Source: Pecten maximus (lineage: Eukaryota). Taken from it: a stretch of 64,000 bases of DNA. This document shows positions 41,701 through 47,700 of the stretch, piece after piece. Within the stretch, counting starts at the first letter, position 1, and each line of letters starts with the position of its first letter. The stretch is taken from the NCBI RefSeq assembly GCF_902652985.1, contig NC_047024.1, forward strand, positions 40,176,001 through 40,240,000. The letters run 5' to 3'. The position numbers were made by a program, and so were the translations under genes. Below the pieces are notes generated by a model. That model was not told the origin of the DNA. It saw only the letters and a program-made list of their open reading frames with translations, and searched no databases.

Positions 41701-44700
41701 TTATTTTCGTTCTTCGAAATTATAGACAGGAAAAACACATATCTATGGCCTTGATATATATTTTTCAATTACTGACAACACTGACGTCATATACACTCAT
41801 AATAATTCAATTACAGGCATGCGACATGTACAATATGTTTAATCGAAAAACTTCTATCTAGTGGGTAAAGGGAGATAACTCCTACATAATTATAACGTGT
41901 ATTTGCACTTGAAGCAATGATTGATAAAGTGTGCTGTTACTGTCACAGGGTCTTGTCACAGATCCAAAGTTTATTGATGGGCGATGTGATTGCTGTATAT
42001 CGTCACAGGGACGTGTTACAATATTATTTATACAATACTATATTAAATTTTGTATATAACATCCGGATTCCATATCCTACCGTTACAATATAGATATCAA
42101 TTTTATTTCATTCATAATTCAACATTAAGTTCATAACGACCCATAGTACAGTACAAAAGAATAGAATCTGGAAATAAGTTGTTCTAATCTGTATCTATCC
42201 GTGCCCCTGTGATATTGCACCAACTTTGTAACTTTTTACTTACGAATTAATTCTTAAATTTAATAGTTAAACAAACCTTAAAACGATTTTCTTCTAATAT
42301 GATCAAGATAAGAATTTAAAAAAACGAGATGGATATAAATACCTTGGTTTGAGAGAGGCCGTATGATGGGCCATAACTAAATCTGAGAGTGGCGGTATGG
42401 TGGGGTATATAATTAAAACTGAGAGTGACGGTATAGTGGGGTACATAACTAAAGCTGAGAGTGGCGGTATGGTTGGGTACATACCTAAAGCTGAGAGTGG
42501 CGGTATGGTGGGGTACATACCTAAAGCTGAGAGTGGCGGTATGGTGGGGTACATACCTAAAGCTGAGAGTGGCGGTATGGTGGGGTACATGCCTAAAGCT
42601 GGGAGTGACGGTATGGTGGGGTACATAACTTAAGCTGAGAGTGGCGGTATGGTGGGGTATATACCTAAAGCTGACAGTGGTGGTATAGTGGGGTATATAC
42701 CTCAAGTTGAGAGTGGCGGTATGGTGGGGTACGTACCTAAAGCTGAGAGTGGCGGTATGGTGGGGTACATACCTAAAGCTGAGAGTGGCGGTATGGTGGG
42801 GTACATAACTAACACTGAGAGTGGCGGTATGGTGGGGTATATACCTAAAGCTGAGAGTGGCGGTATGGTGGGGTATATACCTAACACTGAGAGTGGCGGT
42901 ATGGTGGGGTACATACCTAAAGCTGACAGTGGTGGTATAGTGGGGTATATACCTAAAGCTGAGAGTGGCGGTATGTTGGGGTACATAACTAACACTGAGA
43001 GTGACGGTATAGTGGGGTATATACCTAACACTGAGAGTGGCGGTATGGTGGGGTACATACCTAAAGCTGAGAGTGACGGTATAGTGGGGTACATACCTAA
43101 AGCTGAGAGTGGCGGTATGGTGGGGTACATACCTAAAGCTGAGAGTGACCGTATAGTTGGGTACATACCTAAAGCTGAGAGTGGCGGTATAGTGGGGTAC
43201 ATACCTAAAGCCGAGAGTGGCGGTATGGTGGGGTACATACCTAAAGCTGAGAGTGACAGTATAGTGGGGTACATACCTAAAGCTGAGAGTGACGGTATAG
43301 TGGGGTACATACCTAAAGCTGAGAGTGGCGGTATGGTGGGGTACATACCTAAAGCTGAGAGTGGCGGTATAGTGGGGTACATACCTAAAGCTGAGAGTGG
43401 CGGTATGGTGGGGTACATACCTAAACCTGAGAGTGGCGGTATGGTGGGGTATATACCTAAAGCTGAGAGTGGCGGTATGGTGGGGTACATACCTAAAGCT
43501 GAGAGTGGCGGTATGGTGGGGTACATACCTAAAGCTGAGAGTGGCGGTATGGTGGGGTACATGCCTAAAGCTGGGAGTGACGGTATGGTGGGGTACATAA
43601 CTTAAGCTGAGAGTGGCGGTATGGTGGGGTATATACCTAAAGCTGACAGTGGTGGTATAGTGGGGTATATACCTCAAGTTGAGAGTGGCGGTATGGTGGG
43701 GTACGTACCTAAAGCTGAGAGTGGCGGTATGGTGGGGTACATACCTAAAGCTGAGAGTGGCGGTATGGTGGGGTACATAACTAACACTGAGAGTTGCGGT
43801 ATGGTGGGGTATATACCTAAAGCTGAGAGTGGCGGTATGGTGGGGTATATACCTAACACTGAGAGTGGCGGTATGGTGGGGTACATACCTAAAGCTGACA
43901 GTGGTGGTATAGTGGGGTATATACCTAAAGCTGAGAGTGGCGGTATGGTGGGGTACATAACTAACACTGAGAGTGGCGGTATAGTGGGGTACATAACTAA
44001 CACTGAGAGTGGCGGTATGGTGGGGTACATACCTAAAGCTGAGAGTGGCGGTATAGTGGGGGTACATACCTAAAGCTGAGAGTGGCGGTATGGTGGGGTA
44101 CATACCTAAAGCTGAGAGTGACCGTATAGTTGGGTACATACCTAAAGCTGAGAGTGGCGGTATAGTGGGGTACATACCTAAAGCCGAGAGTGGCGGTATG
44201 GTGGGGTACATACCTAAAGCTGAGAGTGACAGTATAGTGGGGTACATACCTAAAGCTGAGAGTGACGGTATAGTGGGGTACATACCTAAAGCTGAGAGTG
44301 GCGGTATGGTGGGGTACATACCTAAAGCTGAGAGTGGCGGTATAGTGGGGTACATACCTAAAGCTGAGAGTGGCGGTATGGTGGGGTACATACCTAACAC
44401 TGAGAGTGGCGGTATGGTGGGGTATATACCTAAAGCTGAGAGTGGCGGTATGGTGGGGGTACATACCTAAAGCTGAGAGTGGCGGTATGGTGGGGGTACA
44501 TACCTAACACTGAGAGTGGCGGTATAGGGGGGTACATACCTAAACCTGAGAGTGGCGGTATGGTGGGGTACATACCTAAAGCTGAGAGTGGCGGTATGGT
44601 GGGGTACATACCTAAAGCTGAGAGTGGCGGTATGGTGGGGTACATACCTAAAGCTGAGAGTGGCGGTATGGTGGGGTACATACCTAAAGCTGAGAGTGGC

Positions 44701-47700
44701 GGTATGGTGGGGTACATACCTAAAGCTGAGAGTGGCGGTATGGTGGGGTACATACCTAAAGCTGACAGTGGCGGTATGGTGGGGTACATACCTAAAGCTG
44801 AGAGTGGCGGTATAGTGGGGTACATACCTAAAGCTGAGAGTGGCGGTATGGTGGGGTACATACCTAACACTGAGAGTGGCGGTATGGTGGGGGTACATAC
44901 CTAAAGCTGAGAGTGGCGGTATGGTGGGGTACATACCTAAACCTGAGAGTGGCGGTATGGTGGGGTACATACCTAAAGCTGAGAGTGGCGGTATGGTTGG
45001 GGTACATACCTAAAGCTGAGAGTGGCGGTATGGTGGGGTACATACCTAAAGCTGAGAGTGGCGGTATGGTGGGGTACATACCTAAAGCTGAGAGTGGCGG
45101 TATGGTTGGGTACATACCTAAAGCTGAGAGTGGCGGTATGGTGGGGTACATACCTAAAGCTGAGAGTGGCGGTATGGTGGGGTACATACCTAAAGCTGAG
45201 AGTGGCGGTATGGTGGGGTACATACCTAAAGCTGAGAGTGGCGGTATGGTGGGGTACATACCTAAAGCTGAGAGTGGCGGTATAGTGGGGTACATACCTA
45301 AAGCTGACAGTGGCGGTATGGTGAGTACATACCTAAAGTTGAGAGTGACGGTATAGTGGGGTACATACCTAAAGCTGAGAGTGACGGTATGGTGGGGTAC
45401 ATACCTAAAGCTGAGAGTGAGGGTATGGTGGGGTGCATACCTAAAGCTGAGACTGGCGGTATAGTGGGGTACATACCTAAAGCTGAGAGTGACGGTATGG
45501 TGGGGTACATACCTAAAGCTGAGAGTGACGGTATGGTGGGGTACATACCTAAAGTTGAGAGTGACGGTATAGTGGGGTACATACCTAAAGCTGAGAGTGA
45601 CGGTATGGTGGGGTACATACCTAAAGCTGAGAGTGGCGGTATGGTTGGGGTACATACCTAAAGCTGAGAGTGGCGGTATGGTGGGGTACATACCTAAATC
45701 TGAGAGTGGCGGTATGGTGGGGTACATACCTAACACTGAGAGTGGCGGTATGGTGGAGTACATACCTAAAGCTGAGAGTGGCGGTATGGTGGGGTATATA
45801 CCTAAAGCTGAGAGTGGCGGTATGGTAGAGTACATACCTAAAGCTGAGAGTGGCGGTATGGTGGAGTACATACCTAAAGCTGAGAGTGGCGGTATGGTGG
45901 GGTACATACCTAAAGCTGAGAGTGGCGGTATGGTGGGGTACATACCTAACACTGAGAGTGGCGGTATGGCGAGGTACATACCTAAAGCTGAAAGTGGCGG
46001 TATGGTGGGGTACATACCCAAAGCTGAGAGTGGCGGTATAGTGGGGTACATACCTAAAGCTGAGAGTGGCGGTATGGTGGGGTACATACCTAAAGCTGAG
46101 AGTGGCGTTATGGCGAGGTACATACCTAAAGCTGAGAGTGGCGGTATGGTGGGGTACATACCTAAAGCTGAGAGTGGCGGTATGGCGAGGTACATACCTA
46201 AATCTGAGAGTGGCGGTATGGTGGAGTACATACATAAAGCTGAGAGTGGCGGTATGGTGGGGTACATACTTAAAGCTGAGAGCGGCGGTATGGTGGGGTA
46301 CATACCTAAAGTTGAGAGTGGCGGTATGTAGGGGTACATACCTAACACTGAGAGTGGCGGTATGGCGAGGTACATACCTAAAGCTGAGAGTGGCGGTATG
46401 GTGGGGTACATACCTAAAGCTGAGAGTGGCGGTATGGTGGGGTACATACCTAAAGCTGAGAGTGGCGGTATGGTGGAGTACATACCTAAACCTGAGAGTG
46501 ACAGTATGGTGGGGTACATACCTAAAGCTGAGAGTGGCGGTATGGTGGAGTACATACCTAAAGCTGAGAGTGGCGGTATGGTGGAGTACATACCTAAAGC
46601 TGAGAGTGGCGGTATGGTGGGGTACATACCTAAAGCTGAGAGTGGCCGTATGATGGGGTACATACCTAAAGCTGAGAGTGGCGGTATGGTGGGGTACATA
46701 CCTAAAGCTGAGAGTGGCGGTATGGTGGGGTACATACCTAAAGCTGAGAGTGACGGTATGGTGGGGTACATACCTAAAGCTGAGAGTGGCGGTATTATGT
46801 GGTACATACCTAAAGCTGAGAGTGGCGGTATGTAGGGGTACATACCTAAAGCTGAGAGTGGCGGTTTTATGTGGTACATATCTAAAGCTGAGAGTGGCGG
46901 TATGGTGGGGTACATACCTAAAGCTGAGAGTGGCGGTATGGTGGGGTGCATACCTAAAGCTGAGAGTGGCGGTATGGCGAGGTACATATCTAAAGCTGAG
47001 AGTGGCGGTATAGCGGGGTACATACCTAAAGCTGAGAGTGGCGGTATAGCGGGGTACATACCTAAAGCTGACAGTGGCGGCATAGCGGGGTACATACCTA
47101 AAGCTGACAGTGGCGGTATACTCATTATCAGAGTATCTAGTTCTGTCTTGTCATCCAGAGATTCTTCGTTTCCCAGCCACTGGAACACTGCGATGTCCCG
47201 ATAGGACGCGAGCTGGGCGATGGGGATCATCGCTTGGAAAATAACATCATTGTCATTACATGTATATTAAAAATATAATAGAACTTCTCAACATTTATAA
47301 TAAAATGAATGATACAAAATATAAACCTCTATTCATAAAAACGTATTGAATATTGTTGAGCAGATGAAACTATTGATAGTTCCTTTACATAAAACGTCAT
47401 TACTTTCTGTGTCATAATGACGATGTACGCAATATCGTCACAAAAAAGGGGTAATGTTACTATGACTACCGAAAAGGGAAGTTATATATATATATATATA
47501 CATGTATAAACAACGCTAGATCACGATAGAAGCTACATATAATTTTGATTACGTTATGACCGGTACAACTTATAAGGACATGTACCAATTAATTATCTGC
47601 ACGAGCACGGATTTAGATACGATTCAATTTCCTAATTGATCGTCACTAGTTATGAAATACGATGTAAACGTCAGGTTGTGATTTAGATTTGTATCCAGAC

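What the first reader, a model, noticed from the sequence alone, without database searches (positions are those of the whole stretch)
42370..47232. A 5' splice donor amplified ~130-fold: the exon-intron junction minisatellite could give a variable-length receptor ectodomain
Seen: the 36-bp unit is not an unrelated intronic satellite. It is the last 22 nt of cyclase exon 3 (IPPLSALG) fused to the first 14 nt of the intron, so most copies recreate TTTAG|GTATGT, identical to the real donor. The unit length is a multiple of 3, and the first ~40 copies (47097 to ~45658) stay in frame without a stop. The frame is lost at a 1-nt insertion (~45646), regained at ~45322 and lost again at ~44998. The copies nearest the exon share its CTG-TCA variant, and some distal copies have inactivated or weakened donors (TTATGT, ATATGT, GTATAT). 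Inference: use of donor n splices in phase to exon 4 and inserts n x [12 protein letters not shown] into the ligand-binding domain. This would give a ladder of isoforms, with out-of-frame donors feeding NMD and array length acting as an allele-specific dial. Otherwise the spliceosome must pick the first donor over more than 100 near-identical competitors, which would also be notable.
Basis: partly seen in the sequence, partly recalled or inferred. Interest (0 to 1): 0.85.

Follow-up and report, generated by a model that had tools for sequence, protein, structure and literature searches.

The report
Splice-donor minisatellite in scallop cyclase intron
An intron of a king-scallop receptor guanylyl cyclase gene begins with about 130 tandem copies of its own exon end plus splice signal; this repeat type is already known ("mirage" minisatellite, human F7), this copy is very large, and nothing found here shows that the extra splice sites are used.

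Summary
Window 42350-47119 (gene on the minus strand) holds a 36-bp x ~131 array. Its unit is the last 22 nt of exon 3 plus the first 14 nt of intron 3.

- 97 junctions read exactly TAG|GTATGT.
- 118 junctions keep GT.
- 47 pseudo-donors are in phase and stop-free.

The array is unique to this locus in the genome, which is Pecten maximus. The exon end (IPPLSALG) is conserved across bivalves, so the array was copied from the junction and not the reverse.

The isoform ladder is not supported. Full-length orthologues in Argopecten irradians (RefSeq plus three assembled transcripts) and Mizuhopecten yessoensis join ...SALG|GILTFF with no inserted units. Exons 1-4 of the window are intact and as conserved as the rest of the ectodomain. 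Frameshifting indels are tolerated inside the array.

The class is known: minisatellites whose first monomer spans an exon-intron boundary (human F7, IFI6, CBS, LMNB2, PDGFA; amphioxus "mirages"). In those cases the first donor, or at most the first three, is used. This scan has already reported the same class at many other loci of this genome.

One oddity remains: RefSeq splits the gene at this intron, and one model reads 3.7 units into the array.

Verdict: a very large new member of a known kind.

The parts
47098..47232 (-). Exon 3 (135 nt) of a receptor guanylyl cyclase (ANF-receptor-type ligand-binding domain). It ends ...IPPLSAL + G(phase 1).
   Evidence: The sequence was read. tblastn of the Argopecten orthologue P0003 gives 47248-47096. 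It is 100% identical to P. maximus RefSeq XP_033753207.1. The exon end is conserved in bivalve orthologues.
47092..47100 (-). Authentic 5' splice site TAG|GTATGT. The last exon base is 47098 and the first intron base is 47097.
   Evidence: The exon 3 to exon 4 join at this point reproduces ...SALG|GILTFF of the orthologue proteins.
42350..47119 (-). 36-bp minisatellite of ~131 units. Each unit is 22 nt of exon end plus 14 nt of intron start. The first 22 nt (47098-47119) are the exon itself.
   Evidence: TRF. Unit list. Per-position variation. Unique to this locus in the genome.
45657..47097 (-). Units 1-40: in phase with exon 3, no stop, 38 of 40 downstream junctions with GT.
   Evidence: The 788-aa open frame 44864-47230 is listed.
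42557..44393 (-). Recent internal duplication of a 27-unit block (~970 bp). Units 76-99 (44393-43529) and units 103-126 (43420-42557) are 858/865 identical, against 780/865 for a control pair.
   Evidence: (lag-27 minimum).
41431..42349 (-). Unique remainder of intron 3, with degenerate terminal units at its upstream edge and a strong polypyrimidine tract plus AG at 41431-41470.
   Evidence: Sequence read.
41203..41430 (-). Exon 4 ([23 protein letters not shown]...). It is in phase with donors that end in phase 1.
15171..50363 (-). Whole receptor guanylyl cyclase gene: about 23 exons, all open and 78-97% identical to Argopecten irradians XP_069133430.1.
   Evidence: tblastn. Precomputed Pfam domains of the orthologues are PF01094, PF07714, PF07701 and PF00211. 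The ectodomain matches NPR-C/NPR-A structures.

Best explanation
This is a junction-spanning ("mirage"-type) intronic minisatellite. A 36-bp segment straddling the exon 3 / intron 3 boundary of a king-scallop receptor guanylyl cyclase gene was tandemly duplicated. It then expanded to about 131 copies by unequal exchange or slippage, including a recent 27-unit block duplication. The array therefore repeats the donor site about 130 times inside intron 3.

I infer that the spliceosome uses the first, authentic donor. The likely reasons are exon definition and 5'-to-3' preference for the most upstream site. The array would then be removed as ordinary intron, yielding the normal full-length receptor. 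At most, the nearest one or two pseudo-donors are used at a low level. On this reading the array is a tolerated by-product of a very minisatellite-rich genome and not a device for protein diversity.

Shown: the anatomy, the locus specificity, the direction of copying, the intact gene, and the canonical junction in orthologues. Inferred: which donor is used in Pecten maximus.
For: - Anatomy and copy counts.
- The array is found only at this locus in the 918-Mb assembly.
- The exon end is ancestral. [11 protein letters not shown] is identical in Argopecten and Mizuhopecten and recognisable in oysters (IAPLSAIG) and Mya (MAPISSLG). It aligns to the strand-to-helix turn ...RVAPAYAKMG... of NPR-C.
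- Argopecten RefSeq X1 and X2, three Logan contigs of 3.8-5.1 kb that each hold a ~1150-aa product (too short for the genomic gene, so taken as assembled transcripts), and Mizuhopecten X1 all join SALG|GILTFF with no inserted units.
- All exons of the window's gene are open. Exons 1-4 are 84.2% / 82.6% identical to the two orthologues, against 84.3% / 82.0% for exons 5-9. The part upstream of the array is therefore under the same constraint as the part downstream, which requires productive exon 3-exon 4 splicing.
- Seven 1-nt indels and 13 lost GTs are tolerated in the array, as expected for non-coding sequence.
- Published precedents: F7 IVS7 (37 bp x 5-9, only the first donor used; pseudo-sites are functional but silent), LMNB2 and PDGFA (first donor only), IFI6 and CBS (first three donors) (PMC1557585). 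Amphioxus Adh3 and globin "mirages" do not disturb regular splicing (PMC3087553).
- The same gene has a second, 3-copy junction repeat at the exon 7 donor. The window holds at least ten other minisatellites, so array birth is frequent here.
Against:
- I could not see whether the orthologues that splice canonically carry the array at all.
- RefSeq does not join exon 3 to exon 4 in P. maximus. XP_033753207.1 (193 aa) runs from exon 1 through exon 3 and 3.7 repeat units past three intact donors. XP_033752927.1 (932 aa) starts in exon 5.
- The precedents are vertebrate and amphioxus genes with at most about 25 pseudo-sites, not 130.
- Predicted RNA accessibility does not favour the authentic donor.
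Confidence: 0.8

Rival explanations
1. Limited alternative donor use. Besides the authentic donor, the nearest one or two in-phase pseudo-donors (47062|47061 and 47026|47025) are used constitutively at a lower level. This would give receptor isoforms with +12 or +24 residues at the start of a helix in the ligand-binding domain, as in human IFI6.
For: Donors 1 and 2 are exact TAG|GTATGT copies, in phase, and would lengthen exon 3 only to 171 or 207 nt. [quoted passage not shown] The third junction is ATATGT, a natural stop to such a series.
Against: No orthologue protein or transcript shows an insertion. Searches for exon 3-containing proteins of 84-268 aa and 433-1379 aa found no +12 or +24 form. 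F7, LMNB2 and PDGFA use only the first site.
Confidence: 0.15
2. Many of the 47 in-phase pseudo-donors are used, giving a variable-length ectodomain. Out-of-phase donors feed nonsense-mediated decay, and array length acts as an allele-specific dial.
For: There are 47 in-phase, stop-free GT donors, and the unit is a multiple of 3. A RefSeq model reads into the array.
Against: A period of 36 is not special here: two other unrelated 36-bp arrays lie in the same window. Frameshifts are not purged. Tens of Pro-rich 12-mers would be inserted inside a conserved fold element of the Venus-flytrap domain. No known case uses more than the first three sites. Exons longer than a few hundred nt are poorly defined.
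Confidence: 0.04
3. The array impairs intron 3 removal in P. maximus. The locus would then mostly yield truncated or retained-intron transcripts, as the split RefSeq annotation suggests, and the full-length receptor would be reduced or lost.
For: RefSeq splits the gene exactly at this intron, and exon 4 appears in neither model. No P. maximus transcript-derived protein holding exon 3 was found in the protein collection.
Against: Exons 1-4 are intact and as conserved as downstream exons. The Ylistrum balloti model also starts at the same Met in exon 5 and the older Mizuhopecten model starts in exon 3, which points to generic annotation weakness at the poorly expressed 5' end. The last two codons of the 193-aa model are not collinear with the genome, which suggests an alignment artefact in the repeat.
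Confidence: 0.08
4. Assembly artefact. The array length or its internal structure is a mis-assembly of long reads.
For: The frameshifting indels all sit at a C homopolymer. A 27-unit block is duplicated at 99.2% identity. An amphioxus mirage was reported as mis-assembled in a draft genome (PMC3087553).
Against: There are 56 distinct unit variants with ordered proximal, central and distal subfamilies and degenerate edges, as in real arrays. 4.8 kb is well within long-read length. The RefSeq model reproduces units 1-4 exactly, but it derives from the same assembly.
Confidence: 0.03

Closest known systems
Human F7 intron 7 VNTR (37 bp x 5-9), Borensztajn et al. 2006, PMC1557585
   Same: It is a minisatellite whose first monomer spans the exon-intron boundary, so the authentic donor is followed by identical pseudo-donors. 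The pseudo-sites are functional but silent, and the most upstream site is chosen.
   Different: The F7 unit holds only 4 exon nt and is out of frame (37 bp), with 4-8 pseudo-sites. Here the unit holds 22 exon nt, is 36 bp, and there are about 130 pseudo-sites, 47 of them in phase. Splicing was tested experimentally for F7 but not here.
Human IFI6 (6-16) intron 2 and CBS intron 13 junction minisatellites (as reviewed in PMC1557585)
   Same: The donor is reiterated about 25 times (IFI6) or 15-20 times (CBS).
   Different: The ladder stops at three rungs in those genes. No such isoforms were seen for this gene's orthologues.
Amphioxus "mirage" minisatellites (Adh3, globins BflGb6/BflGb9), PMC3087553
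   Same: These are tandem duplications spanning an exon-intron boundary in an invertebrate. They are length-unstable, show concerted evolution with diverged edge units, and leave regular splicing undisturbed.
   Different: They have few copies (3-6 in the globins) and units of 10-160 bp. Both 5' and 3' boundaries are affected. Here there are about 131 copies at a donor.
Other splice-junction minisatellites of this same genome, reported earlier by this scan
   Same: They share the same architecture and the same species. Earlier notes report many loci, and first-donor splicing where RNA could be laid on.
   Different: Those are notes that I did not re-test. This locus appears to be among the largest arrays, and its unit is in frame.

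Membership tests
Junction-spanning ("mirage") minisatellite | Head-to-tail array of 10-100+ bp units | tested here: met
   36 bp x 132.4 copies, 92% matches. 131 junction copies were parsed.
Junction-spanning ("mirage") minisatellite | The first monomer spans a real exon-intron boundary, so the exon end is part of the unit | tested here: met
   The exon's last 22 nt match unit positions 15-36 at 21/22. The array is in register from base 47097. Exon status is shown by RefSeq and orthologue proteins.
Junction-spanning ("mirage") minisatellite | The splice signal is reiterated in the intron | tested here: met
   97 copies read exactly TAG|GTATGT, and 118 of 131 keep GT.
Junction-spanning ("mirage") minisatellite | The exon part is ancestral, so the array was copied from the gene and the exon was not captured from a satellite | tested here: met
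   IPPLSALG is conserved in scallops and recognisable in oysters and Mya. The unit is absent elsewhere in the genome.
Junction-spanning ("mirage") minisatellite | The authentic (most upstream) site is still used and regular splicing is kept | not testable with these tools
Indirect support comes from intact, equally conserved exons 1-4 and the canonical junction in orthologues.
Junction-spanning ("mirage") minisatellite | Length polymorphism or instability | not tested
   Only one haplotype is in the assembly. The internal 27-unit duplication at 99.2% identity shows recent turnover.
Receptor (membrane) guanylyl cyclase, NPR-like | ANF-receptor ligand-binding domain, kinase-homology domain, dimerisation region and class III cyclase domain | tested here: met
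   Precomputed Pfam domains PF01094, PF07714/PF00069, PF07701 and PF00211 are on the P. maximus and Argopecten proteins. All exons map to the window. The ectodomain of a relative matches NPR-C/NPR-A structures at E = 5e-17 / 6e-12.

The most novel reading that the evidence does not exclude
Many of the 47 in-phase pseudo-donors are used in Pecten maximus. The receptor's ligand-binding domain would then carry a variable number of 12-residue inserts set by donor choice and by array allele. In a weaker form, the 130 U1-binding sites tune the rate of intron 3 removal, so array length acts as an expression dial.
Probability: 0.05. Interest if true: 0.75.

Novelty: new member of a known kind. Interest (0 to 1): 0.3.

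Why it matters
With about 130 near-identical donors, 47 of them in phase, this may be the largest natural example of the F7-type arrangement among the cases cited in PMC1557585 and PMC3087553, which have at most about 25 pseudo-sites. It lies in an invertebrate whose splicing rules are little studied. [quoted passage not shown]

It also has a practical consequence. The RefSeq annotation of this gene is split in two at the array, and one model carries repeat-encoded residues. Junction minisatellites, which this scan finds to be common in this genome, are thus a source of annotation error.

As biology it is most likely a tolerated by-product of minisatellite turnover.

Tried and rejected
- **Paralogues.** Exon 3 has only one weak match elsewhere in the genome (40% identity, E = 0.04). 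Exon 4 has none. The array was therefore not copied from a paralogue.
- **The search of protein representatives with exon 4.** It returned only distant or fragmentary hits, which were not informative for the junction.
- **Repeat-encoded peptides in any database protein.** Only the P. maximus RefSeq model XP_033753207.1 was found.
- **RNA structure masking of pseudo-donors.** Rejected. Mean unpaired probability of positions -3..+6 is 0.23 for the authentic donor against 0.315 +/- 0.057 for pseudo-donors. The authentic site ranks 120th of 129 in openness.
- **Selection on donor positions in the array.** +1G varies in 10 of 123 units and +5G in 14 of 123, which is neither specially conserved nor clearly degraded. 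The counts are inflated by the block duplication, so no conclusion was drawn.
- **The neighbouring 6.7-kb array (30296-37027) and the 30-bp array (37618-37969).** Their units do not match the adjacent exon ends, so they are not junction copies.
- **C-terminus of the 193-aa RefSeq model (…PPLS-L-stop).** It is not collinear with the window after 46961. It equals the third frame of the unit (CTT TAG) and would need a gap of 36k+1 nt. I could not see the mRNA record, so this is left unexplained.
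Full report
**What is there**

The window is a eukaryotic, AT-rich, minisatellite-rich stretch. 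Tandem Repeats Finder reports one array at 42350-47119 with period 36, 132.4 copies, 92% matches and no indels at the TRF level. At least ten other minisatellites lie in the same 64 kb.

Read on the minus strand, the array starts exactly at a splice donor. Exon 3 ends ...ATACCGCCACTGTCAGCTTTAG, and the intron begins GTATGTACCCC. I parsed the array unit by unit.

- There are 131 junction copies including the authentic one.
- 123 units are 36 nt, six are 37 nt and one is 35 nt.
- There are 56 distinct unit sequences, and the consensus unit occurs 36 times.
- The exon's last 22 nt equal unit positions 15-36 at 21 of 22. The preceding 14 exon nt are unrelated to the unit.

**Donor copies and reading frame**

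- 97 junctions read exactly TAG|GTATGT.
- 118 of 131 junctions keep GT.
- The weakened forms are GTATAT (14), TTATGT (8), ATATGT (2), GCATGT (2), GTACGT (2) and GTATGC (2).
- Counting phase and stops from exon 3, 47 pseudo-donors (n = 1-40 except 3 and 6, plus 50-58) would splice in phase to exon 4 with no stop.
- All seven 1-nt indels lie in or next to the C4 run of the unit. They could be real slippage or long-read consensus errors.

**Array history**

- The edges are the most diverged. Units 1-4 carry CGCT/CGCC variants, and units 130-132 decay into unique intron.
- Units 76-99 and 103-126 are 858/865 identical, against 780/865 for a control pair. A block of about 970 bp was therefore duplicated recently.
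- A 216-nt piece of the array finds 28 matches in the 918-Mb assembly, and all of them lie inside this array. It is a locus-specific minisatellite and not a dispersed satellite or transposon-borne repeat.

**The gene**

tblastn of the Argopecten irradians protein XP_069133430.1 (P0003) maps about 23 exons on the minus strand from 50363 to 15189. All are open and 78-97% identical. The orthologues carry PF01094 (ANF receptor), a kinase-homology domain, PF07701 and PF00211. An ectodomain relative matches NPR-C and NPR-A structures. This is a receptor guanylyl cyclase.

The window belongs to Pecten maximus. Two RefSeq proteins of that species on a 44.8-Mb contig match it exactly.

**Direction of copying**

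The exon end is ancestral.

- [10 protein letters not shown]|GILTFF is identical in Argopecten and Mizuhopecten.
- It is recognisable in oysters (SIAPLSAIGNILTIF) and in Mya (TMAPISSLGGIMMLF).
- It aligns with the ...RVAPAYAKMGEMM... strand-to-helix element of NPR-C.

The array was therefore copied from the junction. The exon was not captured from a repeat.

**Is there an isoform ladder?**

The indirect evidence argues against the ladder.

1. Every full-length sequence of the orthologue joins exon 3 to exon 4 with no inserted unit. These are Argopecten RefSeq X1 and X2, three Logan contigs of 3.8-5.1 kb each holding a ~1150-aa product (too short for the genomic gene, so taken as assembled transcripts), and Mizuhopecten X1. 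I could not check whether those species carry the array.
2. Exons 1-4 of the window are intact. They are 84.2% / 82.6% identical to the two orthologues, the same as exons 5-9 (84.3% / 82.0%). The part upstream of the array is therefore constrained like the rest, which requires productive exon 3-exon 4 splicing.
3. Frameshifts and donor losses are tolerated in the array. A 36-bp period is not special here, because two unrelated 36-bp arrays lie in the same window.
4. Searches for proteins holding exon 3 or the repeat peptide found no +12n form.

**One oddity**

RefSeq splits the gene at this intron.

- XP_033753207.1 (193 aa, "guanylate cyclase 2G-like") contains exons 1-3 and then reads through three intact donors into 3.7 repeat units. 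It is collinear with the window up to 46961 and ends with L-stop, which is not collinear.
- XP_033752927.1 (932 aa) begins at a Met in exon 5.

This could mean retained-intron reads or impaired splicing. However, the Ylistrum balloti model starts at the same Met and an older Mizuhopecten model starts inside exon 3. I therefore read it mainly as weak annotation of a poorly expressed 5' end, disturbed by the repeat.

**What is known**

The architecture is described in the literature. Borensztajn et al. 2006 (PMC1557585) study the F7 intron 7 VNTR (37 bp x 5-9), whose first monomer spans the boundary.

- The pseudo-sites are functional but silent, and the most upstream functional site always wins ("oriented scanning").
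- The paper also lists IFI6 (25 pseudo-sites; the authentic site plus the two nearest are used) and CBS (15-20 repeats; likewise).
- In LMNB2 and PDGFA only the authentic site is used.

In amphioxus such arrays are called "mirages" and do not disturb regular splicing (PMC3087553). I took that term from earlier notes of this scan and checked it in the paper. Those notes report the same class at many other loci of this same genome, so the scan has found this before on other DNA. I did not re-test their claims of genome-wide enrichment.

In this very gene I saw a second, small example: three copies of about 23 nt of exon 7 end plus donor.

**Mechanism**

- Shown: a 36-bp junction segment amplified about 131-fold, with recent block duplication.
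- Inferred: the initial event was a tandem duplication across the junction, and growth was by unequal exchange or slippage.
- Inferred: the first donor is chosen because it is the nearest 5' site downstream of the exon 3 acceptor (exon definition and upstream-site preference).
- Predicted RNA accessibility does not explain the choice. The authentic site is among the least open.
- Minor use of donors 1 and 2 (+12 or +24 aa) remains plausible by analogy with IFI6.

**Verdict**

The ladder is unsupported, though not directly refuted. This is a very large new member of a known kind of repeat. Interest is modest. Its main value is as an extreme natural test case for 5' splice-site choice and as a warning for gene annotation.

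The two N runs (39534-39682 and 49897-50045) were left untouched.

Noticed in passing
window 38380-38458 (- strand): A second, small junction repeat in the same gene. The end of exon 7 plus its donor (…CATTTCATG|GTAGGGA…) is present in three tandem copies of 23-24 nt. The pseudo-donors lie 23 and 47 nt downstream of the real one (last exon base 38446).
   Followed up: partly
window 46961-50363 and 15171-39937 (- strand): RefSeq annotates this single receptor guanylyl cyclase gene as two genes. XP_033753207.1 (193 aa) covers exons 1-3 plus 3.7 repeat units. XP_033752927.1 (932 aa) runs from exon 5 onward. Exon 4 (41203-41430) is in neither. The last two codons of the 193-aa model (L, stop) are not collinear with the genome.
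   Followed up: partly
window 30296-37027: A 6.7-kb compound minisatellite (periods 27/41/68) with strong GC skew fills most of the intron after exon 9. It starts about 75 nt from that donor. Its unit contains AG|GTAGGA but does not match the exon end.
   Followed up: partly
window 37618-37969 (- strand): A 30-bp x 11.7 array ends 26 nt upstream of the exon 8 acceptor. Its unit contains TTTAG|GTAACA, again an AG|GT motif, but I saw no clear match to a neighbouring exon edge.
   Followed up: partly
window 41184-41213 (- strand): The exon 4 donor also begins GTATGTAC, followed by ATACC. This resembles the start of the intron 3 unit. It may simply be the local donor consensus.
   Followed up: no
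window 9351-11691, 53010-53584, 54620-55691, 56909-58740: Further large minisatellites outside the finding: 19 bp x 123, 36/108 bp x 16, 41 bp x 26 and 31 bp x 59. The region is unusually dense in tandem arrays.
   Followed up: no
window 39534-39682 and 49897-50045: Two runs of 149 N each lie inside introns of the gene, next to exons 5 and 1. They were left as they are.
   Followed up: no
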